The notes under the pieces: model-generated | The model's input: only the letters and a program-made list of their open reading frames with translations | The model's database searches: none | Told to the model about the DNA's origin: nothing | Shown here: positions 3,049 to 64,000 of the stretch, one piece after another | Position numbering within the stretch: position 1 is the stretch's first letter | Layout of the letters: every line of letters starts with the position of its first letter | Virus record (IMG/VR): IMGVR_UViG_3300045996_002337 | Span: 285,661-349,660 of that record | Direction: 5' to 3' (one strand) | DNA length: 64,000 nucleotides | Translations under genes and position numbers: made by a program

Positions 3049-3067
3049 GCTGTGATTATATCACAAA

Positions 3068-4284: not shown

Positions 4285-4285
4285 A

Positions 4286-16641: not shown

Positions 16642-18738
16642 TTAACTTACTCCGTGACCGAAGCTTGTGAGTCGCATTCGCGTTGCGTCTCCACCTACGT
16701 ACATCGCGAGACCTGGTGAACCACCGGTGAGAGGCGTTCCATCAGTATAATCAATAGCTGCTGTCGTGCTACCGTTTAGATAGACTCGAATCCGTCCGTT
16801 CAAGCTAGTGATCTTAACCGTGTTTGGCCCAGTGAATGTCAAGCCGTGGGCCGTCGTGTCACTTACCTGTGCGCTTGCTCTGTAAAGCAAGATCGACGAA
16901 GAATTAAGGCGCACGTGGTATCCCTCACCTGCACCGCTCCGATGAATGTACAAGTATAAGGTTTCACCGTTAGCCGTGAACGTCGTACCACCAGCAAGCG
17001 TAGCTTGAGCTGCTTGGTTTGTGCCCGTCACTGAGCTTAGATATGGAGGATCGTTATGCTCAACATAGCCGTTGCCAGTTACCTGCAGCGCCGAGTTTGT
17101 TACCGCGTAGCGAGCGTCGCCACTCCAGTTTGAATCAATCTGCTCAAGTGTTGTGCCATTAGCTTGATTGAAGAGGATGGATGTGCCGATGGTCGGTTCA
17201 GTTCCATTTGGTTCCCCACCACCAGGTTCCCCACCACCAGGTTCCCCACCACCAGGTTCCTCTACTGGTGTGACTCCTGTTTCACCGAGCGCCCAAGATG
17301 GCAACGCAATCATGTACGATGATTTATCTGAGCGACTGCCTCCTTGGGTCAGTGGCATGTCAGATGCAAACAACACACGCGTAAAGTCGTTGTTTACAGT
17401 GCCGTGCGGTTCAGAGAAGTAATCCTCCTCGTCGGGCCGAACCTCAGTGTACGTGTATGCAAGGCGCTTTGGCGTTTCTGGCGTAGGAGTAAGCTTAGCT
17501 GCCATGATAACGCCATCTTTCCAAATCATTCCGGTGTTGTTTGGAAGATACCAATCTTTGGTGTAAGAACCAACTAAAACCCAGCCAGGGCGTTTAGTAG
17601 CAGTCCCACACATGTGCCACGCATAATCAGTACCGCCATAACCAGAGAACATTGGATATGCAACGCCATTGTCGAGGCGACGGTAGAAGAGATATCCATC
17701 GGGAACATCAGGCATATTACCGTCATTATAGTTCACGGATACATACACCTCGTTACCTTCAGCATCAATTGCCGTATCGGCGTGCTCGCCGTAGTAGCTA
17801 AGCTGGGTGAAGTTGCCGGTGTCCTTGTCGTAAGCTCGCGTTCCATCTGTAGTGTTGATGCCTTGTGCAGCTGCTTGCGCCATGGTGTAGCCTGATGCAT
17901 TTGACCAAGACACGATGGCGTACTTGCCCTTAGGGCTCGTAGAAATGTTGTTTGGCTTATTGGTAGTTGGCCAGCTTCTAGCAATTGTGTTTGTTTGACG
18001 ATCATACATGATAAAGCCAATCATGTTGAACTGTTCATCTTGACACGCAAGAGCCCACCAACGACCATCGTCACTCGGCCGACCTTCACCCTGAAATGAA
18101 ATTCGAGTTACGTTGTTCCAACCAAGAGCCGCCATGTGAGACGTAAAATCAAATGCTATCGTGCGAACTTTTGTTGACACATTGAAATCGTAAAAAACTA
18201 ACCCGCCATTGATATCGGTGCATGTGATGATGTTTGGATCTGTTGGATGCCACATCGGCTCACAGTCACCTGTTAGCTGCCATGTGTTGCTTGGAAGACC
18301 GAGCGCATTGGCTGCTGGTGAGGCGGTGCGCCCTCCGGGCAAGCGCACGAATGTGTTCGCATCGTAAAGATACCAAGCGCCACGTGACGACTGCGAAATG
18401 AATAGGGTGTTATTGCAGTTGAATGCCTGCCGGCGACTGTACTCATGGCGATTATGGGTAGCATCTCCGTCAACATCTGCTAAGGAAGTAGCTCTGAAAA
18501 TCTTTGTTCCAAAGGTGGGTTCAGTGAAACTTGGAACCGTGATGGAGCTTGCCTTCGATGCTGGCTTTAGCACCTGCTGTCGCGTGAGATACGTCTGATT
18601 CTGAACAGGGCGCCAAGAAGTATCATAGAGCGCGTCGAAGGTTTTAGCCACATTGCCACGAACCACGGGGGGTGCAACTCGCGGCAACGCATTTCTTACC
18701 GCGCGTTGGATCTGAGAAAACATGAAGCGCTTTGTCAT
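16642..18738 (-). CDS. Beta-propeller (oligogalacturonate-lyase/TolB-like) protein with C-terminal ConA-like lectin domain; paralog 1
   Basis: FTEPTFGTKIFRAT...RHEYSRRQAFN, WHPTDP, EGRPSDDGRWW; GGGEP linker; C-terminal domain shared with paralogs 2 and 3. Confidence 0.6.
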   Translation of the reverse strand: MTKRFMFSQIQRAVRNALPRVAPPVVRGNVAKTFDALYDTSWRPVQNQTYLTRQQVLKPASKASSITVPSFTEPTFGTKIFRATSLADVDGDATHNRHEYSRRQAFNCNNTLFISQSSRGAWYLYDANTFVRLPGGRTASPAANALGLPSNTWQLTGDCEPMWHPTDPNIITCTDINGGLVFYDFNVSTKVRTIAFDFTSHMAALGWNNVTRISFQGEGRPSDDGRWWALACQDEQFNMIGFIMYDRQTNTIARSWPTTNKPNNISTSPKGKYAIVSWSNASGYTMAQAAAQGINTTDGTRAYDKDTGNFTQLSYYGEHADTAIDAEGNEVYVSVNYNDGNMPDVPDGYLFYRRLDNGVAYPMFSGYGGTDYAWHMCGTATKRPGWVLVGSYTKDWYLPNNTGMIWKDGVIMAAKLTPTPETPKRLAYTYTEVRPDEEDYFSEPHGTVNNDFTRVLFASDMPLTQGGSRSDKSSYMIALPSWALGETGVTPVEEPGGGEPGGGEPGGGEPNGTEPTIGTSILFNQANGTTLEQIDSNWSGDARYAVTNSALQVTGNGYVEHNDPPYLSSVTGTNQAAQATLAGGTTFTANGETLYLYIHRSGAGEGYHVRLNSSSILLYRASAQVSDTTAHGLTFTGPNTVKITSLNGRIRVYLNGSTTAAIDYTDGTPLTGGSPGLAMYVGGDATRMRLTSFGHGVS
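17210..17260. repeat. 15-bp tandem repeat x3 encoding (GGGEP)3 linker
   Basis: ggttccccaccacca at 17210, 17225, 17240. Confidence 0.9.
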
Positions 18739-20177: not shown

Positions 20178-20178
20178 A

Positions 20179-22179: not shown

Positions 22180-22200
22180 ATTATTCTCCTGAGAACGCTC

Positions 22201-22206
22201 TATTTA
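22201..22206 (-). promoter_or_regulatory. Late promoter TAAATA
   Basis: Intergenic, upstream of fibre gene. Confidence 0.6.
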
Positions 22207-22209
22207 AGG

Positions 22210-25200
22210 TTACTGCTGTGTGGTCAAGAAGTTTCCGTTTGAATCAGTTAGGAAGTTTCCGTTTGAATCTGTCAAGAAGACTTCATCACTCGGCGCTCCT
22301 GTGCTTGCTTCACCATTATGGCGGAAGTCTGAAATTGTTACGTTCGCTGGTACGCCGTTTGCAAAGATTCCAAAACCCGGATATCCACCAGTTAATGGTG
22401 TCGTATCAGTATAGTCAATGCTCGGCGTGCTAGATCCATTGAGATAAACGCGAACACGGCCAGCGAAGGTAGTCATACGAACGGTGATGCCAGACGCGGG
22501 GATATCAAAGCCGTGTGATTGAGAGCCTGAGAGTGTGGTTCCACGGTAAAGCTGAATGGAACCTGGGAGCACACGAACTTGATAAAAGTTATTGCCACCT
22601 GAGTTGTTAGCATACAAATATGCTTGCTCTCCACCTTCCGCCCAAGCACCACCACCAGCTGCCAGTGTAAACTGCGCAGCTTGATTATTGCCGATAGTTT
22701 TTCCAAGCAGGACGGTTCCTTCGGTGTACCCGTTTCCAGCGGCCCGCATTGTCGAATCTGTTACCGCATAGGATGTAGAGTCGCCAAACCAATCGGCGTC
22801 AATTGCTTCAAGCGTAGTTCCATTTGCTTGGTTAAACGTTACGATGGTCGTTGGCGTTGGCTCTGAGGCTGGAAGCTCGACGGTAGAAGTGTTTGAGTAC
22901 GCAACAACATCAGGCCCTTGGTTGTTGGAACCAGTGACCCGTAAACGCCACTCACCTGCAACATCGAGTGTTGGACTAAGCACCGTAAAGCTGCTGTCGG
23001 TCCAAGTGCCAGAGACATTTCGCTGCCACATGAAGGCGAGAGTTGGCGCCGGGTTTCCAGTCCAAGTTCCTGCATCACCAACCATTGCAGTGCCGACGTT
23101 TCCAGTTGGATTAATCGACGGGGCGACAGTGTTTGCGGTGGCTGACAACGGCGCGGTTACGATAACATTCGACGCGGTGCTGAGTGTTCCACCAACGTTT
23201 GTCGCGCTTTCAAACCAACGATAATAAACGCCGTTCGGCGTGCCGCTCGGGATAACGTATGTTGACCCAGTTGCTGCTGGTGCAATCGCTGTCCAAGTCG
23301 TTCCATCGGCTGAAGTTTCCCATGCCCCGCTAACTATTGGAGTCGGCACGCCGACATAGGATCCAAGAACTCGTGAAATGGTTCCATCAGCGGCGTAAGT
23401 GCCAGATACACTCGGTGAAGCGGTGCGCTGTGGCGCAGAGCTTCCAGCCACAGGGAATGCGTCTGACGGCAGGATAAGGGCGTATGAAACTAGCTCGTTA
23501 GACCCATCAAAGTTGCTGGCAAAAACGATGCGTGTCAAGTCTTGGTTTGGCGTTGCATGAGGTTCGGCTTCATATGGCGAACCAGTGGAGCGGTGATGGG
23601 CAAGACGATAGAGCTTAGCTGGACGCTCCATTGTAGGTGGTTGAATTTCAGCAACAACGATTTGACCGTCATATGAACCGTTACCAACGCCGGAGTATTT
23701 GGAAAGAACAACAAAGCCTGGGCGCGAGGTGCAGGTACCGGAAATGTGGAAGCCGTCGCCTGTTCCACCGTTAAACGGTAGGAACGGAATTTCCCAAGTG
23801 CCACCACCATCAAGACGGCGCACAAAAATAGTGTCGCGCGTTAGACCATCTGCGGTTCCATGAAGCGAAATGGCAACAAGAACTTCAACAATCTCGTCAT
23901 TTTCATCGATATAATAAGCAAGGTCGCTATGTTCACCTAGAACGCTCAGCGCGGTGAACGAAGAAAAATCTGCAGTATACGCTCTTGCGCCTCGGGCCTG
24001 TGTAATCGGTGCTGCTTGTTCATCTGCCATGTTGGCAGCTGCGCTCGTGTACCACGATGGCACCGCATATTCGCCAGTAAATGACGTGCTAATGTGGTCA
24101 GGTGGGTTAGTTCCGCCAACAACAACGCTGCCAATGATTTGGTCAAGACCAAGATCATACATGATCAGGCCAATGTGAATATCATTCTGGTCATTGACCA
24201 TCAGCGCCCAACGATTCCAATCATGTGAAGGGCGCCCTTCACCTTTGAAATAGGCCTTTCGCGCATTTAACCAGACGCCGCCCATTTCTTGAAATTTTGG
24301 CGTAAGATCAAAAAGCACGGACGTTGTGTGGGTGAAGACGTCACGCACATACCAGATCAATCCACCATTTCTCGCAGTGTACGCAAGCTTTGCGCGATCC
24401 GTTGGATGCCAAATTGGATCACAGCCGCCCGCCAATCCAGGAATCGCTCCGTTTCCTGGAGGTCCAATACGGCCAGAATAAATTAACTCGAGTGAAATCG
24501 CGTCAAATTGGTACCAGAAACCATTTGACGCCTTCATCAACATGCGAGACCCATCAGCATTGTATACCTGACGCCGGGAATAATCATGCCGGAAATTGGT
24601 AACGGTTGCATCGGGGGCGTCGACGATAGAAACTAGCTTACGGACCTCGACATTAAATGCTGGATCTGTGTAACCGCCCACAAACAGGTTTTCACTTTTA
24701 GCAGGTGCCGTCACCGCGGGTTGGGTGACCGCTGCAGTGCCCTCATCAGCTACCCAGCTCACGTCATAGAGGTGGTCAAAAATTGGAGAGCCAAGGCCCC
24801 GGGCCGGGTTAGTCACCTGCAAATGAAAATATGAGGTCGACATCAACGCGCCGTCTGACAACGTGTAAGGTACCGTGAAATCACCAACGAAGTCAAGCGT
24901 TGGCATAAATGTGAAGCTTTGGTTAGCGTTTAACGTCAACGAGCCATTGGCCAGCGTAATTGATTCGCCGACAGAAATACCAATACCATTCACCTCTACA
25001 ATTGAAATACTTGAGCCAGCATCAATATCTGAATCGTTTTCTAGTGGCCAAAATACTACCGGGGTATTGATGATCGTTGTCGCAAAGTCGCCAATTGATC
25101 GAGGCGCGTCATTGACTGCGATGATTGTGATTGTCAGAGTTGATTGCTTTACGTCTGTGCCGTTTGTCGCTTGATAGGTGATCAGCGGCACCTCACCATT

Positions 25201-25518
25201 CCAGTCAGGAGATGGGGTGAACGTCCATGCCCCCGTTGCGGCCAACGTAAAACGGCCGGTGCTTGGAATGTCACATGGCTGCCCCACCGCAAAAATGCCA
25301 GTCACGCCGGCCACGGTAAACTGCGTGGCCGTCAGTGTGCCAGTTGTTGCAATGTCGTTTTGAAGTACATTTCCTGAAAGAGCGTTGTCTTCGAAACCAG
25401 AGGCGACGTCGGGGTTCAAAGTTAGACTTGATGGAGGCGTTAGATTATATGCATCTAAAACCGTCGTTGCACCGTAATGAATTTTACCCTCACGGTTGTT
25501 AAATCTAAAACCTGGCAT
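22210..25518 (-). CDS. Large adhesin-like virion protein: 2 cadherin/VCBS-like Ig domains, beta-propeller, 2 Ig-like domains, ConA-like domain; paralog 2
   Basis: EDNALSGNVLQND, AVNDAP..GDF, RHDYSRRQVYN, WHPTD, GEGRPSHD; C-terminal FLTDSNGN repeat. Confidence 0.7.
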   Translation of the reverse strand: MPGFRFNNREGKIHYGATTVLDAYNLTPPSSLTLNPDVASGFEDNALSGNVLQNDIATTGTLTATQFTVAGVTGIFAVGQPCDIPSTGRFTLAATGAWTFTPSPDWNGEVPLITYQATNGTDVKQSTLTITIIAVNDAPRSIGDFATTIINTPVVFWPLENDSDIDAGSSISIVEVNGIGISVGESITLANGSLTLNANQSFTFMPTLDFVGDFTVPYTLSDGALMSTSYFHLQVTNPARGLGSPIFDHLYDVSWVADEGTAAVTQPAVTAPAKSENLFVGGYTDPAFNVEVRKLVSIVDAPDATVTNFRHDYSRRQVYNADGSRMLMKASNGFWYQFDAISLELIYSGRIGPPGNGAIPGLAGGCDPIWHPTDRAKLAYTARNGGLIWYVRDVFTHTTSVLFDLTPKFQEMGGVWLNARKAYFKGEGRPSHDWNRWALMVNDQNDIHIGLIMYDLGLDQIIGSVVVGGTNPPDHISTSFTGEYAVPSWYTSAAANMADEQAAPITQARGARAYTADFSSFTALSVLGEHSDLAYYIDENDEIVEVLVAISLHGTADGLTRDTIFVRRLDGGGTWEIPFLPFNGGTGDGFHISGTCTSRPGFVVLSKYSGVGNGSYDGQIVVAEIQPPTMERPAKLYRLAHHRSTGSPYEAEPHATPNQDLTRIVFASNFDGSNELVSYALILPSDAFPVAGSSAPQRTASPSVSGTYAADGTISRVLGSYVGVPTPIVSGAWETSADGTTWTAIAPAATGSTYVIPSGTPNGVYYRWFESATNVGGTLSTASNVIVTAPLSATANTVAPSINPTGNVGTAMVGDAGTWTGNPAPTLAFMWQRNVSGTWTDSSFTVLSPTLDVAGEWRLRVTGSNNQGPDVVAYSNTSTVELPASEPTPTTIVTFNQANGTTLEAIDADWFGDSTSYAVTDSTMRAAGNGYTEGTVLLGKTIGNNQAAQFTLAAGGGAWAEGGEQAYLYANNSGGNNFYQVRVLPGSIQLYRGTTLSGSQSHGFDIPASGITVRMTTFAGRVRVYLNGSSTPSIDYTDTTPLTGGYPGFGIFANGVPANVTISDFRHNGEASTGAPSDEVFLTDSNGNFLTDSNGNFLTTQQ
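22224..22279. repeat. Imperfect 24-bp tandem repeat encoding FLTDSNGN-FLTDSNGN-FLT
   Basis: gaagtttccgtttgaatc occurs twice. Confidence 0.8.
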
Positions 25519-25545
25519 CAGAAGTTCCCTGTTATTTTCAGTGTG

Positions 25546-25551
25546 TATTTA
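25546..25551 (-). promoter_or_regulatory. Late promoter TAAATA
   Basis: Between the terminator hairpin and paralog 2 start. Confidence 0.65.
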
Positions 25552-25553
25552 GG

Positions 25554-25581
25554 ATTCTGAACGGCTTTCGCCGTTCAGAAT
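25554..25581. terminator. Terminator hairpin after paralog 3
   Basis: ATTCTGAACGG-CTTTCG-CCGTTCAGAAT. Confidence 0.7.
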
Positions 25582-25582
25582 T

Positions 25583-28500
25583 TTAGGATACGCCGTGCGC
25601 GATGTGACTGATTCTGACTCTGCTTGAATCCGCACCAGGGTACGAGAACAGGCCAACATATCCGCCAGTGATTGGATCTGCATCTGTGTAATCAATGATC
25701 GGTGTTGCGGAACCATTGATGTACGCCCTGATTCTACCGTAATAACTCGTCATGCGAAGAGTCATGTCTGTGGTGAGCAGGTCTACGTTGTGAGCAAGTG
25801 GGCCAACAGCCGGCTCTCCAAAATTGTCCGCGCGGTAGAGACGCAGCTGGGTGTCACGAATTTCAATCTTGTATCCAGTTGTAGACACACCTGTCGTGTG
25901 AATCATAATCGTCAAGTGGTTGCCACCCGGTCCAATGTTTGCTGGCGCAGCAAGCGTAACTTCAAACGCTTGATTGTTTCCTCCGGACGTTGTGAGCCAG
26001 ATAGGACCGGTGTTATAGCCCTCCGTTGTGCCGTTACGAAGCATGTTGTCGACGATGACATAGTTGCTTGTAATGCCGTCCCAGTTAGGATCAATCATCT
26101 CAATTGACGTGTCATTGGCGGCGGTCAAGTTCACAACGTTTGTTGGAATAGGCTCAAAAACCGGCTCAGAAATTGTTGCGTTGTTTGAGAATGCAACAAT
26201 CGGCCCACCCTCGCTATTCGAAGCTGAAACGCGAAGGCGCCAAACGCCCGCCGGTGAAAGCAACGCGCTCCTCGTTGTGAACGCCGTGTCAGTCCATGAT
26301 GCGGCGACGTCACGCTGCCACATGTATGTGAATGTCGGTGTTGGGTTTGCAGACCATGATCCGCGATTACCAACGCTAAGAACGTCCGTCCGTCCATTGG
26401 TGATAGACGGTGCAACTAGGTTCACTGGGGCAGAAATTGGTGCAACTGTTAGCGCGTTTGAGAGGGCGGCTGCAAAGCCGTTGGCATTCGCTGCCATTTC
26501 ACGCCAACGATACATAGTGCCGTTCGTGATGCCACCAGGAATTACATACGTTTCAGAGCTCGCGCCGGTGATGTCAGTCCATGAAGAACCGGAGTTTGTA
26601 GAAATTTGCCATTTACCCGTGACTGTTGCCACAGGCGTCGAATCGTACGTACCCGCAGTACGCGTGAGTGTGCCACCGGGCGAAACTAGACCTCCAATTT
26701 CTGGATCTGTAAGCTTCGTCGGTGGGTATGTGCCAGCGGTTGGAACTGCCCATGAAGGTAGCCCAATCATAAGCTGCGGGTACGGCATGCCTGAATTGTG
26801 GAAATCACTACCAAAGAGAATACGTGTCAGATCACGGTTTGCGGTCGCAAATGGTGTTGCCCAATATTCACCGCTGTCTGTTCTATGGTGAACGAGTCGG
26901 TATGCACGGGGTGATTCAGTAGTGAGCTCAATCAGCATGATCGTGCCGTTGCGCCAGGAAGCAGGTGTACCACCAGCGTTGTAGCTGATAAGCGCCCAAC
27001 CCGGCTTTCCATAATGGCATCCGCTAAAGTGCATGGCGTTGTTGCCGCCCGGAGCATACGCGCTCAGACCCTCATAGATGTAAGGAACGCCCGTTTCAAT
27101 GTCGCGGAAGTATAGATCACCGTCTAGCATGTCCATAAATGGACTGTAAGATGCGCTAACCCAAACATCTCTACCATTCACATCGACTGCCAAGTCTCCG
27201 TGCTGGCCACTTTGGTCAAGAACCGTAAAGACGCTGCCAGAGATAGCGTCAATTGGATATGCTCTGGTGCCGGCAAACTGTGTGATATCGCGGCCCGCTT
27301 CCAGCTCCATTGTGTTGCCCGCGATGCCGCCCTTACCACCAAGTACAGCCCATGCACCGCTGTGGCTAACACCAGCCCAGTCAATTGCACGGTTAGTAAC
27401 GACGTAGTCAAGGATGGTATCTGTCTCGCGGTCATAGGTAATTACGCCAATGTAAGAATCATCCGAGCCGCGGGCCTGCAGGCACCAAAAGCGACCATCC
27501 GCGGATGGTCGACCCTCACCACCCATGTTTAGACGTGTGGCATTTTGAAAACCTGGTGGCATGCGTCCTTCAAATGAGAACAGCGGTGAGATTTCACCTG
27601 TTCTAATATCAATCTCTTGGAAGAACAGATTCAAGCCACGGTTGTTGAACCAAAACTTGTGTGGATCCGTAGGGTGCCAAACAATTTCAGCATCAGCGGC
27701 GACAGTTGGCATGCGTCCGTTCACCCCACCTGGTACGTCAATGTGCGCGAAGGTGTTGGCGTCGTAGAGGTGCCACCAGCTGTTTTGCGCAGTTGCAACA
27801 AATCTAGTTGAATCACAGTTGAAACATTGACGCTTCGAGTAGTCGTTTCGAATGTAGCCAACGGTGTCAGCGGTGTCAGTTACATCCGTGACCATGAATA
27901 CCTTGGTGCCAAATGCCGGATCTGTGTACTTGAAATCCGATGTGCTCGTTGATTTAACTGTAGGTTTAACCAAGACCTCGCGCGTGATTACATCTTGCGT
28001 TGAGTTCAGCGCAAAAGTTTCTTCATAGATGCTGTCAAAGGTGGTTGCCGAACCATTCGCCGCCAGGGTCGGAAGCACTGTGATAGTGATCGTGGAGCTT
28101 GCTTGCCCAACGCCATCAGTGATGGAATATGGAAATGAGAATGTGCCGCTATAGCCCGGTGTCGGCGTAAACGTAAGTACGTTATTTGCGCCGATAGTCA
28201 CCGTTCCGTTTGGCACGTTGATAACATTACCCTCAACTGGTGCTTCACCGTTGACTTCATAAAGCGTGAGAACATCGGCGTCAGGATCAACGTCGTTTAG
28301 AATTGGTGAAAAGGTAACCGGCGAATTAAAGGATGCCGTCACCGAATCAGTGGATGCGGTAGGCGCATCCTGCACCGGAGTGATTGTGATTGATAGCGTT
28401 GTTTGGTTCACCGCGTCGCCATTGGTCGCCTGATACGTGACCAATGGAACGTTGCCGCGGTAGTTCGGCGCCGGTGAAAACGTCCAAGCGCCCGTCGCCA

Positions 28501-28774
28501 AAATTCGAAGACTACCGACACCGGTAATAGTTGCAAGCGCGCCAGCGGCGAAGATGCCAACAACTCCAGCAACTGTGAATTGACTAACAACGAGATTACC
28601 AACCGCGGTAAAGTCGTTTGTTAGCACGTTGCCAGTAAGGACTTGATCTTCAGGTCCAGTTACTGCATCGGCGACCAGGGTAATTTGATCACCAGGAAGG
28701 TGGTTAACGTCCAGTACGGTGATATCACCGAATTGAATTTTACCCTCCCGGTTGTTGAATCTAAATCCGCTCAT
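25583..28774 (-). CDS. Large adhesin-like virion protein with the same architecture as 22210..25518; paralog 3
   Basis: Near-identical N-terminus M(S/P)GFRFNNREGKI, EDQVLTGNVLTND, RNDYSKRQCFN, WHPTDP, GEGRPSADGRFW. Confidence 0.7.
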   Translation of the reverse strand: MSGFRFNNREGKIQFGDITVLDVNHLPGDQITLVADAVTGPEDQVLTGNVLTNDFTAVGNLVVSQFTVAGVVGIFAAGALATITGVGSLRILATGAWTFSPAPNYRGNVPLVTYQATNGDAVNQTTLSITITPVQDAPTASTDSVTASFNSPVTFSPILNDVDPDADVLTLYEVNGEAPVEGNVINVPNGTVTIGANNVLTFTPTPGYSGTFSFPYSITDGVGQASSTITITVLPTLAANGSATTFDSIYEETFALNSTQDVITREVLVKPTVKSTSTSDFKYTDPAFGTKVFMVTDVTDTADTVGYIRNDYSKRQCFNCDSTRFVATAQNSWWHLYDANTFAHIDVPGGVNGRMPTVAADAEIVWHPTDPHKFWFNNRGLNLFFQEIDIRTGEISPLFSFEGRMPPGFQNATRLNMGGEGRPSADGRFWCLQARGSDDSYIGVITYDRETDTILDYVVTNRAIDWAGVSHSGAWAVLGGKGGIAGNTMELEAGRDITQFAGTRAYPIDAISGSVFTVLDQSGQHGDLAVDVNGRDVWVSASYSPFMDMLDGDLYFRDIETGVPYIYEGLSAYAPGGNNAMHFSGCHYGKPGWALISYNAGGTPASWRNGTIMLIELTTESPRAYRLVHHRTDSGEYWATPFATANRDLTRILFGSDFHNSGMPYPQLMIGLPSWAVPTAGTYPPTKLTDPEIGGLVSPGGTLTRTAGTYDSTPVATVTGKWQISTNSGSSWTDITGASSETYVIPGGITNGTMYRWREMAANANGFAAALSNALTVAPISAPVNLVAPSITNGRTDVLSVGNRGSWSANPTPTFTYMWQRDVAASWTDTAFTTRSALLSPAGVWRLRVSASNSEGGPIVAFSNNATISEPVFEPIPTNVVNLTAANDTSIEMIDPNWDGITSNYVIVDNMLRNGTTEGYNTGPIWLTTSGGNNQAFEVTLAAPANIGPGGNHLTIMIHTTGVSTTGYKIEIRDTQLRLYRADNFGEPAVGPLAHNVDLLTTDMTLRMTSYYGRIRAYINGSATPIIDYTDADPITGGYVGLFSYPGADSSRVRISHIAHGVS

Positions 28775-28798
28775 TTTTATCCTTCAGGTATGGTAACG

Positions 28799-56099: not shown

Positions 56100-56129
56100 G
56101 TTGTTATCCGTTGTTAAGGATCTATTTAC

Positions 56130-56864: not shown

Positions 56865-57643
56865 GATAGTGGTTTGATAAATTCGCTGAATTGAATTGCA
56901 GGCACTGAAAGGTATTTACCGCTAAACCAGACCTCGTGCTGCTTTCCATCAAACTTGAAAGAGGATGGTGTCTCGAGCGCGACGCCCATACGATCGGGCT
57001 GAAAGATGTCAGGATATTCAGCGTGAAAATCAAGTAACCAGGCACCGCTAATTTTGCCAATGCGCTTGAATTCGGGCTTCGTTTGGTCAATCTTTCCATC
57101 GACCTCCAGACTGTTGAGAATCTGTTCCCACAGATTCTTCAAGTCTGCTGACAATGTTTGGGGCCCGTCTATGTGGAGAACGTCTTCAGCAATTGTTCGA
57201 ATGTAATAGGAAATGGTGCCGAGATTATTTGTTCGGTGTTCCGCAGCTTTAAATGGTCTAATGAAGTTAAAATCTACCTCTTTGGTAATCGCAAGCTTCG
57301 TCCCATTCACCGGAAAGATGGCATAAGTGTTATCTTCTGTCATTTCTGTGACTTCTGTGTCCATCGTAGTAGAGCAGAAGATTGACCTGTCGCGCTCTGG
57401 AAAATCGTTCCATGCTGGGAACGAGAAGATCCATTTGTGCATGGCGCCATTGCCAGACCGGCTGCGCGGGCGCACGCGCTCTGAAGAGTCGCGAACTCTA
57501 ATTGGTTCGTTCTTGCTAGCCGCCCGCCATAATGGGCGTGTCGGGGTCTTCCAATCGGAGCAGTGCTTCTTAAAGAACTCAAGCGCCTCCTCAGCAGAAA
57601 GGGTCCGATCTTCTTCAAGTAAAAATTCCTTGAATGTGATCAC
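56861..57643 (-). CDS. Putative capsid-internal protein, ADP-ribosyltransferase-like paralog B
   Basis: MITFKEFLLEE; PLWRA, RSRS, RDRSIFCST, YAIFP, HEVW. Confidence 0.55.
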   Translation of the reverse strand: MITFKEFLLEEDRTLSAEEALEFFKKHCSDWKTPTRPLWRAASKNEPIRVRDSSERVRPRSRSGNGAMHKWIFSFPAWNDFPERDRSIFCSTTMDTEVTEMTEDNTYAIFPVNGTKLAITKEVDFNFIRPFKAAEHRTNNLGTISYYIRTIAEDVLHIDGPQTLSADLKNLWEQILNSLEVDGKIDQTKPEFKRIGKISGAWLLDFHAEYPDIFQPDRMGVALETPSSFKFDGKQHEVWFSGKYLSVPAIQFSEFIKPLS

Positions 57644-58359
57644 TTCATTTCACCCATAAGTTGCTTCCACACATCCAGACGAAGCGCGACACACTTTCCT
57701 GAAACCCAGCACTCATGCGGTCCGTTCGGTGGGCGAGCGGTTGTAGTCAAGCGTAGGCGCATGTTTGTCTCAGAGTAGGCTTCTTGCAGTGCCTTTGCGA
57801 CGTCTAGCCCGCCAAATATATGAGAGAACAGCTCGCTATTAGGGTCTTCATAGTCTTGCATTGTTTCTTCAATGCCATTGACCATGTCCTCAAATGAGTA
57901 GTCTGGAATGTCAGCATCGCTAAAAATTTCATTCCATGATGAAAGTGATTGACTCGTGCTTTTGCCAATTTTAATTCGAGTGTGCCAAATATCTTCATCA
58001 GAAGTCACGCCAATCTTGACACCATCAAAAGGGATGATCGCGTAAACCTTACCATAGCTTAGTGCGTAGTCTTGATTGTCTGGGCTAGCCATGATGATGG
58101 ATTTGCTTCGAGCTGGGTAACCCTGTGATGGCAAAAATTCATCCATCACAACAGTGTAATGGTTCGTTGTGTTTGCAGAGCTGCGCCCACCCAACTCGCC
58201 CTGGATAATGTACGCCTCTTCTTCGGTCTTTCGGGAGCCACGCCAGAATGGACGCCTAATGTCCATGTCCTTGCAGTTCGCCTCAATGAGCTCGCGCGCC
58301 TTTTCGACGCTGATGTCTTGACGGTGTTTGGCTTCTCTTAAGAAGTCTTTGAATCTCAT
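57640..58359 (-). CDS. Putative capsid-internal protein, ADP-ribosyltransferase-like paralog C
   Basis: Real start MRFKDFLREA; PFWRG, RSS, RSKSIIMAS, YGKVYAIIP, HECW. Confidence 0.55.
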   Translation of the reverse strand: MRFKDFLREAKHRQDISVEKARELIEANCKDMDIRRPFWRGSRKTEEEAYIIQGELGGRSSANTTNHYTVVMDEFLPSQGYPARSKSIIMASPDNQDYALSYGKVYAIIPFDGVKIGVTSDEDIWHTRIKIGKSTSQSLSSWNEIFSDADIPDYSFEDMVNGIEETMQDYEDPNSELFSHIFGGLDVAKALQEAYSETNMRLRLTTTARPPNGPHECWVSGKCVALRLDVWKQLMGEMK

Positions 58360-58360
58360 A

Positions 58361-58627
58361 TTAGCTCGGCATGCTATAGCCTGCAGGAAGCAGGCTAGGG
58401 TTGTTGTTGGCAGCTGCGATGGCAACCTTCTTAGCGGCTGTTAGGGTTCTAGTAATTCTTCGGCCCTTTGATTTCATCCGCAGATCAAATCCCCCGCCTT
58501 TTGACGTAAGCTTGGAGATAGACCCAACTTGTTGATCGCCCGATTTGACGAACCACTTGAACTGATCATCAGGATCGGGCACAAATGTGAGCTTGGCCTC
58601 GCTCTCAAACAATTCTTGAACTCTCAT
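58361..58627 (-). CDS. Small putative internal head protein
   Basis: MRVQELFESE N-terminus. Confidence 0.55.
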   Translation of the reverse strand: MRVQELFESEAKLTFVPDPDDQFKWFVKSGDQQVGSISKLTSKGGGFDLRMKSKGRRITRTLTAAKKVAIAAANNNPSLLPAGYSMPS

Positions 58628-59556: not shown

Positions 59557-60960
59557 TTAATCCTCACCCCAAGCCGGTTTGGAATCTGGCACCCATGTTA
59601 CATGTCCCGTAGAACTTGTGACAAGTTGACCTGTTTCCTCTGCTGCTTCTGCGTGTCGGTTATTTACTACCGGCGGGGCTGATGGAAGATCAGCCGATCG
59701 AGTTACGCCAGAAACTGCGGTTGGACCACCTTCAGCGCTGTCAATGACGGTCGCGCTGTACGCGCGCACGGCCCCTTGATTGACCGCTGTCGACATACCA
59801 GAGGCCAGGTCGCGTGCGGCTGCGCCAATCACACCACCTAAAATGTTTGATGCCTGTGAGCCAATAAGCGAAGCAAAGCGGCCCTTACCTGCAACTGATT
59901 GCACGGCGCGGCTAATTGCGGTAGATGAAATTGACTGTGCCGCCCGGCCCACTTGATTTGTGATGATGTTAGCGAAGGGGCTTCCGCCACCAGCTTGCGT
60001 CTGCGCACTTTGATTTACACTCATGTCAACAGGGGCTCCGCCAACTCCAGGGACCGCGATGCTATAGGCTGGTCCATCCATTGTTGTCATTGCACCGACA
60101 TCGACAATTTCCATCCAGTCGTAGTCGAACTGCATGGTCATCAAGGAAACATCAGATGTTTCATGGTTAAGGTCATCAAGATCGAAGGACACAATGCGGG
60201 CATTCAAGAAGTCATAAATGACTTCCTTTGCAGAACCGCCTAATTGTGAACCCGGGTCAACGAACATCTGTTTCACGCGAATGGCGGAGATGACATTACC
60301 AACTTGACTGTCTGTTACCCCACGAATGGCGTTGTCGCCAGCTTTTGGATCATTTGGCGCCGAGAACATCATACCGTTGCCGGTTGAGAGGGTGTTAGGG
60401 TCTGGTGGTCTGGTGGTGCCTTCACGCAGAAGCTGACGTCGGGTAATTGGTGACTGCAGCATCATCAAGGCGCGGAAGAAGTTCAGCACTCGGTTGCCAG
60501 TATCATCCATGAACGTGATTGTCAATTCGCGGTGGCGAATACGCTTTAGCACCTTCGTGCGAAAGTTGTACATGTTGACGTCGTCTTCATACTCGAAGTC
60601 AATCTTGGGACGGTCAACTGACTTGACCATGAATGTAAAGTCGTTGGCCTTGGCACCACCGAAGATCGTAGGGAAGGCAGCCACTGCTTCAGGCGTAAAG
60701 ACAAATTCCACCTTGAATAGAAATTTGAGCTTTGGTCTGTAACTTGTTCCGCCTGCTAAAGCGTGTGCATACGAGCTGGCGTAAAAGGAACCATCACCGC
60801 GATTAAATGGTACTTGACCACCGGGTAGGGGCTGAGGTTGACCTAGAGCAGGTCCTAGTACTCCGCGGCTGAATGTTTCAACCGCAGCACCAAATTTGTC
60901 TGATGCTTCTTTTTCAAGAGCGATCTTTGTGCTGTCGAGGAAGGGTTTTAGGTTTGCCAT
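59557..60960 (-). CDS. Tail-tube-fold baseplate protein (gp48/gp54/gp19-like)
   Basis: PKLKFLFKVEF, VKSVDRPKIDFE, NMYN, ELTITFMDD, FDLDDLNHE; late promoter at 60985-60990. Confidence 0.7.
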   Translation of the reverse strand: MANLKPFLDSTKIALEKEASDKFGAAVETFSRGVLGPALGQPQPLPGGQVPFNRGDGSFYASSYAHALAGGTSYRPKLKFLFKVEFVFTPEAVAAFPTIFGGAKANDFTFMVKSVDRPKIDFEYEDDVNMYNFRTKVLKRIRHRELTITFMDDTGNRVLNFFRALMMLQSPITRRQLLREGTTRPPDPNTLSTGNGMMFSAPNDPKAGDNAIRGVTDSQVGNVISAIRVKQMFVDPGSQLGGSAKEVIYDFLNARIVSFDLDDLNHETSDVSLMTMQFDYDWMEIVDVGAMTTMDGPAYSIAVPGVGGAPVDMSVNQSAQTQAGGGSPFANIITNQVGRAAQSISSTAISRAVQSVAGKGRFASLIGSQASNILGGVIGAAARDLASGMSTAVNQGAVRAYSATVIDSAEGGPTAVSGVTRSADLPSAPPVVNNRHAEAAEETGQLVTSSTGHVTWVPDSKPAWGED

Positions 60961-61007
60961 GAAGGCCCCACAATGCTGATGCTTTATTTATGGGACCTGG
61001 AAATAAG

Positions 61008-61031
61008 AAGGGGATCCAGCTGGATCCCCTT
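61008..61031. terminator. Perfect 24-bp palindrome, probable terminator
   Basis: AAGGGGATCCAGCTGGATCCCCTT. Confidence 0.7.
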
Positions 61032-61051: not shown

Positions 61052-62509
61052 TCAGTACGCGAAGAGGCGAACTTGATATGCGTTGATGTCAGCATATGTT
61101 GTACCACCCCATGACGAGGTGAACGCGACACGGGTGCCATCACGGCTGATTGAGCCAACTGGTGAGAAGAAGTAGTAATCTTCTTCAGGGAAGGCGGTGC
61201 GGTGCCAAGCGACGTTGAGGATTCGGCCATTCGGCTTCAGTTCAACGAGAGTCAGCTTGCGGTCCATCCAACGGGTGGTTTTTCCTGGTGTTTCGTGCTG
61301 AGCACTGACAAGGATCCAACCTGGCTTGTTGAAGGACTTTCCAGAGAAGTGGAATGCACGACCAGATCCGTCACCGAAGTAGGTTGCCGAGATCTTTGTA
61401 CGAACGCCAGTTTCAATGTTCGTGAAGAACAGATCACCTTCGTTTGCTGCGTAGTCGACTGAAACGTAAACGTCTTGACCTTCTGCGTTAAGCGCGACGT
61501 CACTGTGTTGCGAACCATTCAGAAGCTTACGGCTAGACGTGAAATCACGTGTCCATGCAGCTGTGCCGTTGGTTGCGTCTTCATGGCTGGTAACGCAGTA
61601 CTTGCCTGAAGGCGACATGCTCACGTGGTCAGGACGATTGCCATTGGTGTTTTTGTAACCAAGAATGGTGTTGGTCTGCATGTCCCAAGTGAATACGCCG
61701 AGTGAGTTCCAATTTGCATCGTCTACCATGAAGCACCAGTAACGGCCATCTGCAGATGGCGAACCTTCAGAACGGGTCCATGCAGCGTTTGCAGTTGGCC
61801 AACGTGCTTTAACACGAGCAGCCAAATCACCAACTACGCGTGAAACGCCAGTTGCAACGTTCAATTCATGGACGCGCATGCCGATACCAGTGATTGGTAG
61901 GTAGTAGATGAGATCTGGATCTGTTGGATGCCATTGTGGCTCAGCATCACCAGCGAGACCGGGCAGGCGCTTCTCATATGCGAGGGTGGTCGCATTGTAG
62001 GTGTGCCAGCTGCCGTCAAGGGCTGAGATTAGTTGACGCGTGTTGTTGGCGTTGAAAGCTTGACGACGTGAGTAGTCATTGCGCGCAAAGCCACTTGGTG
62101 GCTCGGAGCGGTCTGTCACACGATAAACCGGGTTACCGAATGTTGGATCTGGTGTCGCGACACCTTTTGCCGGCCGCGCTGTCGTTGGTGACGTAGCAGT
62201 CGAAGGTCCAATTACCCAGCTTCCCGAGGGTGTTGGAGTTGGAGTTGGTGTTGGAGTTGGTGTCGGGGTTGGTGTCGGGGTTGGTGTCACTTCAGGGGCG
62301 ACAACACGGAGTTTGCGGACGCAACCATATTCCGTTGTACCACCAGCTTTAGTGCCGAGACCTTTCGCGCCAGCTTCACAATATGCCAAGGTGGTGTATT
62401 CCTTGAAAAGCGTGCCATCTGGGAGGGTAAGTTCGTAAAATGGTGTTACGGTTTGGGCTTGAGCAGCCGCCGCAACCACCATCGATAGACCGATAATGAT
62501 TTTCTTCAT
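61052..62509 (-). CDS. Secreted beta-propeller protein (signal peptide, small Cys2 domain, PT linker, propeller); paralog 4
   Basis: MKKIIIGLSMVVAAAAQA signal; (PT)n; DPTFGNPVYRVTD, RNDYSRRQAFN, WHPTDP, EGSPSADGRYW; late promoter at 62564-62569. Confidence 0.7.
   Translation of the reverse strand: MKKIIIGLSMVVAAAAQAQTVTPFYELTLPDGTLFKEYTTLAYCEAGAKGLGTKAGGTTEYGCVRKLRVVAPEVTPTPTPTPTPTPTPTPTPTPSGSWVIGPSTATSPTTARPAKGVATPDPTFGNPVYRVTDRSEPPSGFARNDYSRRQAFNANNTRQLISALDGSWHTYNATTLAYEKRLPGLAGDAEPQWHPTDPDLIYYLPITGIGMRVHELNVATGVSRVVGDLAARVKARWPTANAAWTRSEGSPSADGRYWCFMVDDANWNSLGVFTWDMQTNTILGYKNTNGNRPDHVSMSPSGKYCVTSHEDATNGTAAWTRDFTSSRKLLNGSQHSDVALNAEGQDVYVSVDYAANEGDLFFTNIETGVRTKISATYFGDGSGRAFHFSGKSFNKPGWILVSAQHETPGKTTRWMDRKLTLVELKPNGRILNVAWHRTAFPEEDYYFFSPVGSISRDGTRVAFTSSWGGTTYADINAYQVRLFAY
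62229..62290 (-). repeat. (Pro-Thr)n linker, 6-bp tandem units
   Basis: About 10 PT units. Confidence 0.9.
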
Positions 62510-62628
62510 ACGTTCCTTTTGTTAATCAGGAGAGGGTTTACTACAACTACGGTACTGCGATGTTATTTAGCGAATATTGCACCAAGGAACCAAGGCCAAA
62601 ATGAGGTTCGTCTATTATTGGCTAAAAG

Positions 62629-62652
62629 AAAAGGGCCCCTAGGGGCCCTTTT
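62629..62652. terminator. Perfect 24-bp palindrome, terminator of the tail tube gene
   Basis: AAAAGGGCCCCTAGGGGCCCTTTT. Confidence 0.75.
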
Positions 62653-62671: not shown

Positions 62672-63268
62672 TTAGACGGTAACGTTACCGCCCAGGGCTG
62701 AACCATAACCTGCTCCGGATTCGACCTTGCGAGCATGGTCAAAACGGATGGAGGTGGTGATTGTCGCGGATTCAGACGCTGAATAATCACGATCACCAAA
62801 GTCGACGTTAGTCAACCAGCAGCCTTCAAGGATCCATGAAGAGATAACTACCTCGTCACCGTCCAGTTGGTCGATACGAATGCCGAACTTGTAATCGGAA
62901 CCTGTTGCTGCGCTGTTTAGCCAACGACCATCAAGGTCAGAACCGATGATGCGCTGCTGGGTTTCCATTTGCGCTTCAATGACCTTTGTTGCGAGGCCAG
63001 TGATGTCATCCTCGAAGGTAACAGAGATCGGTTCCCACGAATGCTTACCTGCGACGTATGCAGTCGAGTTATAGCGATGCAGCACAACTTCTTCCCACGT
63101 AATGTTGGGCAGCGTGAGGTTAGTTGTTTGCATGGTCAAATTGCGCGAGTTCGCGCCAGGCACCAGTTGACCAATGTTTTGGAAGGTGATGCGGAATTTG
63201 AATTTCAGACGAGGTGCAAGAATGCCGGCGCCTGCTCCCGCAATACCCATGTTCGATAACGTTGCGAT
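62672..63268 (-). CDS. Tail tube protein (T4 gp19-like); start possibly ATC at 63268 rather than ATG at 63250
   Basis: PRLKFKFRITF, LPNITWEEV, YNS..YVAGK..WEPISVTFEDD, WILEGCW, IRFD; late promoter at 63318-63323. Confidence 0.88.
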   Translation of the reverse strand: MATLSNMGIAGAGAGILAPRLKFKFRITFQNIGQLVPGANSRNLTMQTTNLTLPNITWEEVVLHRYNSTAYVAGKHSWEPISVTFEDDITGLATKVIEAQMETQQRIIGSDLDGRWLNSAATGSDYKFGIRIDQLDGDEVVISSWILEGCWLTNVDFGDRDYSASESATITTSIRFDHARKVESGAGYGSALGGNVTV

Positions 63269-63337: not shown

Positions 63338-63730
63338 TCAAGCAGTGATTTCATGCCAGGGCTGGCCAGGCTTGTACCCAGAAATTTTGATCCACTGGTA
63401 TGGAAGTTCACCCCAAGACCTTACTCGTGTTTGGCGGTTGTCAAGAATCCAGCCTTCAGCTTCGCAGACCAAGTGACCTTCGCCTGTTTCAGTCACACAC
63501 ATTGCAATACGATTTGGCACACGGGCTTGGTTGAGAATGTAACGACAGGCAAGGGCGAAGTTGTCACAATCGCCCTTGATTGCACCTGCTTCAATCTGCT
63601 GTGCAATGTACTTTGGATCTTCCCACCGTTCTGGGTGGCCGTACCAGGTTTGATCGTCAACGTACTCAAAAATTGAGTGAACGTAGGCAAACGTTTCCTT
63701 GACCTTGGTGAATTCAGTTTCAGTTAGCAT
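63338..63730 (-). CDS. Transglutaminase-like cysteine protease (BTLCP/LapG-like), catalytic part
   Basis: YVDD..WYG..E.W..P, GDCDNFAL, TGEGHLVC, WILDNR (Cys-His-Asp triad). Confidence 0.82.
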   Translation of the reverse strand: MLTETEFTKVKETFAYVHSIFEYVDDQTWYGHPERWEDPKYIAQQIEAGAIKGDCDNFALACRYILNQARVPNRIAMCVTETGEGHLVCEAEGWILDNRQTRVRSWGELPYQWIKISGYKPGQPWHEITA

Positions 63731-63918
63731 TGTACACCTCTCACTCTTCCTTCAACACACCCAATGGGCGGTGCAGTTTCTCTACCCGTCGGAATTGACG
63801 TCGTTTGTGGAACTACAACAGTAGGCGGCGGCGTAGAAATAGGCGGGGTTTTTGGTAGGGGCTCAAAGCCAGCGCATCCACTTAACGCCATCACCATTGC
63901 GGCTATGATCATCTTCAT
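63724..63918 (-). CDS. Small lipoprotein; may be the N-terminal part of the BTLCP protease
   Basis: Lipobox LSGC; ends TAPPIGCVEGRVRGVQC; stop overlaps protease ATG. Confidence 0.65.
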   Translation of the reverse strand: MKMIIAAMVMALSGCAGFEPLPKTPPISTPPPTVVVPQTTSIPTGRETAPPIGCVEGRVRGVQC

Positions 63919-63941
63919 TCACATTCCTCCTCGGAGACCAG

Positions 63942-63970
63942 AAAAGCCAAGGAGAGAAACCCTCCTTGGC
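63942..63970 (-). terminator. Intrinsic terminator
   Basis: GCCAAGGAG...CTCCTTGGC followed by TTTT on minus strand. Confidence 0.7.
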
Positions 63971-64000
63971 GCACTCTATGCGATGGCGTATATTGTATTT

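What the first reader, a model, noticed from the sequence alone, without database searches (positions are those of the whole stretch)
61052..62509. Secreted (Sec signal peptide) version of the propeller inside the tail gene block
Seen: a classic signal peptide ending AQA, a ~50-aa domain with two Cys, a (PT)10 linker typical of carbohydrate-active enzymes, then the propeller. It has its own late promoter and terminator. Inference: exported to the periplasm late in infection and released at lysis as a free enzyme or lectin (matrix clearing, receptor masking or superinfection exclusion). It may be the host-derived ancestor of the virion-bound copies.
Basis: partly seen in the sequence, partly recalled or inferred. 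Interest (0 to 1): 0.6.

Follow-up and report, generated by a model that had tools for sequence, protein, structure and literature searches.

The report
Exported free propeller enzyme of a jumbo phage
A giant phage carries, between its two tail-tube genes, a late-expressed gene for an exported, non-virion protein whose beta-propeller is related to those on its tail fibres, and whose closest relatives sit inside the lysis cassettes of smaller phages, so it is most likely a sugar-polymer-cleaving enzyme set free when the cell bursts.

Summary
Window 61052-62509 (-) encodes 485 aa: a Sec-type signal peptide ending AQA, a 50-aa two-Cys domain, a (TP)10 linker and a seven-bladed beta-propeller. A T4-type late-promoter motif and a hairpin terminator bracket it. 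The window is the end of a 349.7-kb jumbo myophage record related to RsoM2USA and XacN1.

The propeller has no Pfam family. Its best solved fold match is PL22 oligogalacturonate lyase (Z 28.5, against about 21 for generic WD40), with no sequence-level membership. Hundreds of bacterial homologues (52-59% identity) are mostly lipoproteins or secreted proteins, often fused to carbohydrate-binding modules.

New here:
- The full-length relatives whose contexts were read lie on phage contigs. In 6 of 7 contexts the gene sits directly upstream of the endolysin, behind holin-like genes.
- Orthologues with a signal peptide keep the two Cys. All 9 without one have none.

Export and a non-virion role are well supported. 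A free glycan-cleaving enzyme released at lysis is the best, untested reading. "Ancestor of the fibre copies" is not supported: the fibre copies form a separate deep clade (AU p 6e-65 against one clade). This is a new variant of a known kind, of moderate interest.

The parts
62564..62570 (-). T4-type late-promoter-like motif (C-TAAATA-A), 60 nt upstream of the ATG
   Evidence: The hexamer is strand-specific (21 vs 1 in the window, 94 vs 21 in the genome) and sits upstream of many ORF starts. A gp55-like sigma factor is encoded in the genome.
62514..62517 (-). Ribosome-binding site AGGA, 5 nt before the ATG
   Evidence: Read from the sequence.
61052..62509 (-). Coding sequence of the 485-aa exported propeller protein (P0001)
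   Evidence: Orthologues share 47-67% identity over the full length.
62456..62509 (-). Signal peptide, residues 1-18 (MKK, 13-residue hydrophobic core, AQA)
   Evidence: Read from the sequence. Low pLDDT. The signal co-varies with the Cys pair in orthologues.
62294..62455 (-). Small N-terminal domain, residues 19-72, strand-strand-helix-strand, with Cys44 and Cys63
   Evidence: AF2 pLDDT 94. No PDB fold match with Z of 5 or more. Only a weak DUF7196 hit.
62228..62287 (-). (TP)10 linker, residues 75-94
   Evidence: Low pLDDT.
61055..62197 (-). Seven-bladed beta-propeller, residues about 105-485, PL22-like fold
   Evidence: Foldseek E 6e-15 to 3c5m/3pe7. VIA-align Z 28.5, rmsd 3.4 over 332 residues, against about 21 for generic WD40. 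The nearest named Atlas clusters carry PF14583/PD40.
60998..61031 (-). Intrinsic terminator-like hairpin (10-bp stem) plus U-rich tail, downstream of the gene
   Evidence: -21.1 kcal/mol, z -3.2.
62621..62652 (-). Terminator-like hairpin after the tail-tube gene, which isolates the propeller gene as its own unit
   Evidence: -17.9 kcal/mol.
16642..18738 (-). Fibre-block paralogue (698 aa): short N-terminal peptide, propeller, C-terminal domain of about 185 aa
   Evidence: 32% identity to P0001. Placed in the fibre clade.
22210..25518 (-). Fibre-block paralogue (1102 aa): cadherin/Ig-like repeats, propeller, Ig-like domains, C-terminal domain
   Evidence: TAAATA lies 33 nt upstream.
25583..28774 (-). 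Fibre-block paralogue (1063 aa) with the same architecture
62672..63250 (-). Tail-tube gene directly upstream
   Evidence: phrog_4542 E 4e-42. 53% identity to RsoM2USA_356.
59557..60960 (-). Second tube-like gene directly downstream (467 aa)
   Evidence: phrog_4542 E 8e-15. Matches XacN1 ORF349.

Best explanation
The gene is a self-contained late transcription unit. Its product is exported to the periplasm by the Sec pathway, where the signal peptide is cut after AQA (residue 18). There the small N-domain probably forms a disulfide (Cys44-Cys63). Because the protein leaves the cytoplasm it cannot join the virion, so it is a free protein.

Its seven-bladed propeller belongs to a large, uncharacterised family of bacterial extracytoplasmic proteins. 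The nearest solved fold is the PL22 oligogalacturonate lyase. I infer that it cleaves, or at least binds, a surface or matrix polysaccharide of the host. It would be set free at lysis, where it clears matrix or destroys receptors on debris so that progeny escape. On this reading it is the soluble counterpart of the propellers carried on the tail fibres.

Status of each step:
- Shown: the anatomy, the promoter-like and terminator-like sites, the fold, the family and its distribution, and the lysis-cassette position of relatives.
- Inferred: export and cleavage, catalysis, the substrate, and the time and place of action.
For: Anatomy and regulatory sites.

Export:
- A classic n-h-c signal ending AXA.
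- Among orthologues that share the N-domain, those with a signal keep 2 (or 4) Cys in it, and all 9 without a signal have none.
- The two signal-less genes checked have no in-frame upstream extension that could add a signal.
- Most of the bacterial homologues whose N-termini were examined carry a lipobox or a signal.

Not a fibre: it lacks the N-terminal attachment segments, the Ig-like repeats and the C-terminal domain that the fibre paralogues share.

Enzyme-like:
- PL22 stands well above all other propellers and is the nearest named family by language-model features.
- 18 invariant and about 90 nearly invariant columns across 124 sequences, including the fibre copies. They include His335, Asp337, His387, Glu248, Tyr146 and Tyr446, and several lie at the start of the innermost strand of successive blades.
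- Bacterial members are fused to CBM60, PKD, FN3, InlB-B, laminin-G and sialidase-lectin modules.

Action at or after lysis:
- In 6 of 7 phage contexts the gene lies directly upstream of an endolysin of four different families (GH108, CHAP, phrog_3108, PF00959). It sits behind small genes that are holin-family hits in three contigs, multi-TM in one, and unexamined in two. Start/stop overlaps with the upstream gene were read in three contigs.
- Signal-less variants occupy the same slot.
Against: - No activity, substrate or host is known.
- PF14583 finds nothing in the genome even at E 10, and a family profile finds no PDB sequence. PL22 catalytic or metal residues could not be compared.
- PL22 enzymes are cytoplasmic and act on oligosaccharides.
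- In the jumbo phage the gene is about 23 kb from the GH108 endolysin-like gene (37912-38505), so the lysis-cassette link holds only for relatives.
- The promoter motif lies 60 nt from the ATG, farther than the usual 24-35 nt.
- No transcript or proteome data were available.
Confidence: 0.55

Rival explanations
1. Lysis accessory acting inside the envelope. The exported propeller degrades or loosens an envelope polymer from the periplasm (nascent exopolysaccharide, capsule or O-antigen, periplasmic glucan, or a peptidoglycan-linked polymer). It acts before or at holin triggering and is needed for complete lysis, as LysB is in mycobacteriophages.
For: - Its position directly upstream of the endolysin, behind holin-like genes, in six temperate-phage contigs, with overlapping stops and starts where read.
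- The signal peptide puts it in the periplasm before lysis.
- Homologues are abundant in predatory, cell-lysing bacteria such as myxobacteria and Lysobacterales.
- One homologue is fused to PG_binding_1 (P0107).
Against: - Signal-less, Cys-less orthologues sit in the same slot (P0006), so periplasmic residence before lysis is not required.
- In the jumbo phage the gene is far from the endolysin-like gene.
- Divergent copies on tail fibres point to a surface-exposed ligand.
Confidence: 0.2
2. Non-catalytic lectin. The propeller only binds a surface glycan or receptor. From the periplasm or after release it masks receptors, giving superinfection exclusion or protecting progeny from debris.
For: - Propellers are common binding modules.
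- No catalytic residues could be assigned.
- The same domain on fibres could be purely receptor-binding.
Against: - Conservation is very high (52-59% identity between phage, myxobacterial and Burkholderiales members) with many invariant His, Asp, Glu, Arg and Tyr. That is more typical of an active site than of a fast-evolving receptor binder.
- Bacterial members already carry separate CBMs.
- The nearest fold is an enzyme.
Confidence: 0.12
3. Propeller acting on a non-glycan target, for example a TolB- or PD40-like binder of an envelope protein such as Pal, or a peptidase-associated propeller that weakens the outer membrane.
For: - TolB and PD40/DPP-IV propellers appear among the fold and feature matches (rank 10).
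- The protein is periplasmic and its relatives sit in lysis cassettes.
Against: - These matches are no better than generic WD40, whereas PL22 stands out.
- Bacterial homologues carry CBM fusions.
- There is no peptidase domain.
Confidence: 0.06
4. Virion component after all. The hydrophobic N-terminus is not a working signal, and the protein is a tail decoration encoded in the variable slot between the tube genes.
For: - It is located inside the sheath-tube block.
- The same slot in XacN1 holds a signal-less protein rich in Pro/Thr with a LamG-like domain.
Against: - The n-h-c signal with AXA is canonical.
- The Cys pair co-varies with the signal.
- It has no attachment segment in common with the fibre paralogues.
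- Its relatives lie in lysis cassettes, not in tail modules.
Confidence: 0.04

Closest known systems
PL22 oligogalacturonate lyase (Ogl; PDB 3c5m, 3pe7)
   Same: Seven-bladed beta-propeller. It is the best fold match by a wide margin: Foldseek E 6e-15, VIA-align Z 28.5, rmsd 3.4 over 332 residues. It is also the nearest named family by language-model features.
   Different: - 13-18% identity, and no PF14583 hit at E 10.
- No profile hit to PDB sequences.
- Ogl is cytoplasmic, has a single domain and acts on short oligogalacturonides.
- This protein is exported and has an extra N-domain and linker.
- Metal and catalytic residues were not compared.
Phage polysaccharide depolymerases (tailspikes and their free forms)
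   Same: A phage-encoded domain that appears both on fibres and as a free protein, and a presumed action on host surface polysaccharide.
   Different: From my own knowledge, known depolymerases are mostly beta-helix trimers, and their free forms arise from excess or alternative translation rather than from a separate Sec-exported paralogue. Here the free copy is a distinct gene from a different clade with a signal peptide.
Mycobacteriophage LysB (lysis-cassette accessory enzyme)
   Same: An extra enzyme gene embedded in the lysis cassette next to the endolysin. This holds for the orthologues, not for the window gene.
   Different: LysB is an alpha/beta-hydrolase esterase of phages that infect mycolic-acid bacteria (own knowledge). 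It has an unrelated fold and no Sec signal. A role in lysis is untested here.
Late-expressed, signal-peptide cargo released by phage lysis (for example the subunits of prophage-encoded exotoxins)
   Same: The logic is shared: a late promoter, Sec export to the periplasm, and release only when the phage lyses the cell (own knowledge).
   Different: No sequence or fold relation, and nothing suggests toxicity.
Xanthomonas phage LucasX protein LUCX_246 and the three fibre paralogues of this phage
   Same: The same propeller family. LUCX_246 shares 34% identity and is the only BFVD fold match of note, at E 3e-38.
   Different: These are proteins of 700-1170 aa without a signal, placed beside tail genes and lying in the separate fibre clade.

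Membership tests
PL22 oligogalacturonate lyase (Pfam PF14583) | Sequence match to the family model above its cut-off | tested here: not met
   PF14583 finds nothing in the whole phage genome at E up to 10. The Pfam scan of P0001 gives no such hit. The A2 profile against PDB sequences gives nothing.
PL22 oligogalacturonate lyase (Pfam PF14583) | Seven-bladed beta-propeller fold superposable on 3c5m/3pe7 | tested here: met
   Foldseek E 6e-15, TM 0.68 by target. VIA-align Z 28.5 against about 21 for the next rows.
PL22 oligogalacturonate lyase (Pfam PF14583) | Central metal site (His/Gln ligands) and catalytic base | not testable with these tools
   Model coordinates and residue-level structural alignments are not returned. 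No PL22 sequence could be fetched for a profile alignment.
PL22 oligogalacturonate lyase (Pfam PF14583) | Beta-elimination of uronate-containing substrates | not testable with these tools
   This needs a biochemical assay.
Sec (SPase I) secreted protein | Positive n-region, hydrophobic h-region of 7-15 residues, small residues at -3/-1, no lipobox Cys | tested here: met
   MKK, then 13 hydrophobic residues, then AQA followed by Q. The fold starts at residue 20. Signal and Cys pair co-vary in orthologues. SignalP was not available.
T4-type late transcription unit | TATAAATA-like -10 element upstream and a gp55-type sigma factor in the genome | tested here: met
   C-TAAATA-A lies 60 nt upstream. 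The hexamer is strand-specific and sits upstream of ORFs. A gp55-like ORF was found at E 1.3e-7. Transcript 5' ends were not tested.
Intrinsic terminator | G+C-rich hairpin followed by a U tract | tested here: met
   61031-61008, 10-bp stem, -21.1 kcal/mol, tail CUUAUUU. The U tract is interrupted.
Tail-fibre / virion protein of this phage | Shares the N-terminal attachment segment, Ig-like repeats or C-terminal domain of the fibre paralogues, and has no export signal | tested here: not met
   Only the propeller is shared, and P0001 has a signal peptide instead. The virion proteome cannot be tested here.
Lysis-cassette gene | Adjacent to holin, endolysin and spanin genes | tested here: not met
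   Not met in the window: the neighbours are tube genes, and the GH108-like gene is about 23 kb away. Met for relatives on phage contigs: 6 of 7 contexts.

The most novel reading that the evidence does not exclude
The propeller defines a new, widespread class of lysis-cassette gene in phages of Gram-negative bacteria. On this reading it is an exported glycan lyase or hydrolase, co-translated with holin and endolysin, that removes an envelope or matrix polysaccharide barrier. It would be a functional analogue of mycobacteriophage LysB for exopolysaccharide-, capsule- or O-antigen-rich hosts, and the same catalytic module has been recruited onto tail fibres. It would also found a new polysaccharide-lyase family distantly related to PL22.
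Probability: 0.25. Interest if true: 0.75.

Novelty: new variant of a known kind. Interest (0 to 1): 0.55.

Why it matters
Phages are known to carry sugar-cutting enzymes on their tails. A separate, Sec-exported copy with its own late promoter is unusual. Its repeated placement directly upstream of the endolysin, behind holin-like genes, in unrelated temperate phages points to a release-stage function that standard lysis models for Gram-negative hosts do not include. The domain family is large, strongly conserved, has no Pfam family or solved close homologue, and is common in predatory and biofilm-forming bacteria. An assignable activity would name hundreds of hypothetical proteins. It could also give a soluble, naturally secreted matrix- or receptor-degrading enzyme for biofilm and adsorption studies.

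Tried and rejected
- Sequence searches of P0001 against Pfam, NCBIfam, PHROGs and PDB gave only linker or low-complexity hits. The A2 profile against PDB gave nothing.
- The N-domain alone gave no PDB fold match (best Z 4.6; Foldseek E above 1) and only a sub-threshold DUF7196 hit. A word search restricted to residues 18-74 found only two known orthologues, which is uninformative.
- I tried to fetch PL22 sequences for a profile-profile alignment of catalytic residues. PF14583 was absent from three homologue-bearing genomes and from 301 genomes of the same taxonomic class as one homologue-bearing genome (G001) at E 1e-30, and the control also rang nowhere. The comparison was therefore not done. 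Two papers I consulted held no PL22 active-site details.
- Bacterial genomic contexts (Acidovorax, Myxococcus, Massilia, and a 237-kb contig) showed stand-alone genes with no informative neighbours.
- The literature search for exported depolymerases in lysis cassettes found nothing comparable.
- In-genome duplication of all four propellers is rejected by the AU test.
- Recent transfer from high-G+C bacteria is rejected, because the gene's G+C equals the phage's.
- A SAR-type anchor was considered and rejected: the hydrophobic core has only 13 residues and is followed by AXA.
- The large representative protein search and complex prediction were not used, because no claim here depends on them.

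Full report
**What the window is.** The window is the last 64 kb of a 349,660-bp virus record, estimated 97% complete. The two ends of the record overlap by about 135 bp, so the map closes on itself.
- The large terminase is closest to the jumbo myophages Ralstonia RsoM2USA (46.6% identity) and Xanthomonas XacN1 (42%).
- The window holds ribonucleotide reductase, UvsX-like, helicase, terminase, baseplate, fibre and tube genes, nearly all on the - strand.

**Observation.** ORF 61052-62509 (-) encodes 485 aa.
- Residues 1-18 are MKK, then a 13-residue hydrophobic core, then AQA.
- Residues 20-70 fold confidently as strand-strand-helix-strand, with Cys44 at the start of the helix and Cys63 at the start of the last strand.
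- Residues 75-94 are (TP)10.
- Residues about 105-485 form a seven-bladed propeller. The whole-protein model has mean pLDDT 91.4.
- Three ORFs in the fibre block carry the same propeller at 30-33% identity, and these four are the only copies in the genome.
- The gene order on the - strand is: sheath, a 152-aa Ig-like ORF, a 64-aa lipoprotein, a 130-aa C93-like peptidase, tube, this gene, a second tube-like gene, head-completion gene. 'Inside the tail gene block' is therefore correct.

**Own promoter and terminator.**
- A stable hairpin (-17.9 kcal/mol) with a U tract follows the tube gene. Another (-21.1 kcal/mol, 10-bp stem) follows the propeller gene.
- C-TAAATA-A lies 60 nt upstream of the ATG. 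The TAAATA hexamer occurs 21 times on the - strand of the window and once on the + strand. Genome-wide the counts are 94 and 21, and the bias flips in the one 25-kb bin where the + strand codes.
- About 14 of the window sites lie 24-75 nt upstream of an ORF start. These include both tube genes, three fibre genes, the GH108-like gene and a baseplate gene.
- T4 late promoters are TATAAATA read by gp55 (established knowledge). The genome has a gp55-like ORF at E 1.3e-7.

**What the propeller is.**
- No Pfam, NCBIfam or PHROG family matches it.
- Foldseek puts PL22 oligogalacturonate lyase first (E 6e-15, against 1e-9 and weaker for WD40 proteins).
- An exhaustive VIA-align scan gives Z 28.5 (rmsd 3.4, 332 residues) for 3c5m, against about 21 for the next fifty propellers.
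- The nearest named ESM-Atlas clusters by sequence features carry PF14583 and PD40. The score is 0.89, which counts only as a lead.
- The PL22 model itself finds nothing in the genome at E 10.
- The protein therefore works on a PL22-like scaffold but is not a demonstrable PL22 member.

**The family.**
- The word-based search gave 726 hits. These include Myxococcus, Corallococcus, Cystobacter, Acidovorax, Massilia, Rhizobacter, Lautropia, Silanimonas, Dokdonella and Pseudoxanthomonas, at 42-59% identity over the propeller.
- Most of the bacterial members whose N-termini were examined begin with a lipobox or a signal peptide.
- Many are fused to CBM60, PKD, FN3, InlB-B, laminin-G, sialidase-lectin or PG-binding modules.
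- Across 124 sequences, including the fibre copies, 18 columns are invariant and about 90 nearly so.
- Several conserved polar residues (Glu190, Glu248, His295, His335/Asp337, His387) lie at the start of the innermost strand of successive blades in the model. That is where propeller enzymes place their active sites. This is an inference, because no coordinates were available.

**Export.** Among 64 homologues of similar architecture, those sharing the N-domain split cleanly.
- Members with a signal peptide keep the two (or four) Cys of the N-domain.
- All nine without a signal have no Cys there.
- The two signal-less genes I could read have only 21 and 7 in-frame codons before an upstream stop, so the missing signal is not a gene-calling artefact.
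- This is the pattern expected if the Cys pair forms a periplasmic disulfide. It is independent support that the signal works.

**Context of relatives.** I read the surroundings of eight full-length relatives. Seven lay on phage contigs and one on a bacterial contig.
- P0002, P0004, P0005, P0006, P0020 and P0078 lie in siphophage-like contigs; four of the six carry an integrase. In each, the propeller gene lies directly upstream of the endolysin.
- The endolysin belongs to four different families: GH108, CHAP, phrog_3108 and PF00959. In three contigs a scored Rz-like spanin gene follows it; in the others the small downstream genes were not scored.
- The genes upstream are a phrog_1356/DUF7940 holin in three contigs and two multi-TM proteins in a fourth. 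In the other two contigs they are small genes I did not examine.
- In the three contigs where I read the junction, the upstream stop overlaps the propeller start. One propeller stop overlaps the CHAP start.
- P0023, which lacks a signal, is a lone gene in a replication module.
- P0041 is chromosomal in a bacterium.
- No cultured phage in the collection has the free form. Only LucasX has a copy, of the fibre type.
- In the jumbo phage the GH108-like gene is at 37912-38505, about 23 kb away. Here the gene has become an independent late unit.

**Phylogeny.**
- A tree of 104 propellers splits into two deep clades.
- One clade (48 rows) holds the three fibre paralogues, LucasX_246 and many long, signal-less metagenomic proteins, plus a few bacterial lipoproteins.
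- The other clade (56 rows) holds the bacterial family. Nested within it is a 23-row subclade (support 100) of proteins that share the N-domain-linker-propeller architecture, including P0001. All six members whose contexts I read lie on phage contigs.
- Each fibre paralogue has closer relatives elsewhere than in this genome.
- Forcing the four window copies into one clade costs 495 log-likelihood units (p-AU 6e-65).
- The gene's G+C and GC3 match the phage's.
- So the free copy is neither a recent duplicate nor the in-genome parent of the fibre copies. Which clade is older cannot be told without a root.

**Mechanism.**
- Late in infection the protein is made and exported. Because it leaves the cytoplasm it cannot be assembled into virions.
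- Signal-less orthologues occupy the same lysis-cassette slot. Where the protein waits before lysis therefore seems not to matter, which favours action after release.
- The fold, the conservation and the CBM fusions favour cleavage of a polysaccharide over mere binding.
- Divergent copies on three fibres argue that the ligands are surface glycans.
- My best reading (0.55) is a soluble matrix-clearing or receptor-destroying enzyme released at lysis.
- The rivals are a periplasmic lysis accessory (0.2), a lectin or receptor mask (0.12), a non-glycan target such as a TolB-like binder (0.06), and a virion decoration with a dead signal (0.04).

**Limits.**
- No SignalP run, model coordinates, transcripts, host identity or PL22 sequences were available.
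- The catalytic-residue comparison was therefore not done.
- The large representative protein search was not needed.

Noticed in passing
window 63338-63918 (-): Between the sheath and tube genes lies a coupled gene pair whose stop and start overlap as ATGCTAA. The first encodes a 64-aa proline-rich lipoprotein with an LSGC lipobox. The second encodes a 130-aa Peptidase_C93 / bacterial transglutaminase-like cysteine protease (E 4e-14) with the GDC..H..D motifs intact and no signal peptide. From my own knowledge this is the family of LapG, which cuts adhesins off the cell surface. It may be a second surface-remodelling cargo gene.
   Followed up: partly
L005 9739-12724; L007 7744-10446; L012 3536-6734; L100 6322-9384: In temperate siphophage contigs the propeller orthologue is embedded in the lysis cassette in the order holin-like gene(s), propeller, endolysin, downstream small genes. 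The endolysin belongs to four different families across the contigs.
   Followed up: yes
whole genome G000; window sites listed: TAAATA is a strand-specific motif upstream of genes (94 vs 21 genome-wide), and a T4 gp55-like sigma ORF lies at G000:46353-46658. Together these point to T4-style late transcription in this jumbo phage.
   Followed up: partly
G000 1-135 and 349526-349660 (window 63866-64000): The two ends of the record repeat about 135 bp with one mismatch. The record is therefore circularly closed or terminally redundant, although it is classed as linear. The sheath gene (G000 635-2485) follows the window's end.
   Followed up: partly
L099 5607-7571 (XacN1 ORF350); L098 5606-6775 (RsoM2USA_355): The slot downstream of the tube gene varies among relatives. 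XacN1 holds a 654-aa signal-less protein with very long Pro/Thr-rich linkers and a LamG-like domain, placed between tube and tube-like genes. RsoM2USA holds an unrelated 389-aa protein after its tube gene.
   Followed up: partly
window 16642-31882 (-): The fibre block has six large ORFs. The three with propellers share a C-terminal domain of about 185 aa (37-47% identity). Two of them share the whole architecture, with cadherin/Ig-like repeats. The 480-aa ORF (18735-20177) has an N-terminal GNSLGAG motif reminiscent of SGNH esterases.
   Followed up: partly
window 37912-38505 (-): A GH108 endolysin-like ORF (E 8e-20) has TAAATA 25 nt upstream. A second GH108 domain lies inside a 537-aa ORF at G000:79375-79584.
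   Followed up: no
window 55314-58425 (-) and G000 2581-6522 (-): There are tandem paralogous ORFs of 210-290 aa with similar N-termini (M-x-x-FK-x-FL). Two of them hit phrog_12810, a family of unknown function.
   Followed up: no
window 59557-60960 (-): The second tube-like protein has a long Ala/Gly/Ser-rich C-terminal extension of about 180 aa after the tube domain.
   Followed up: no
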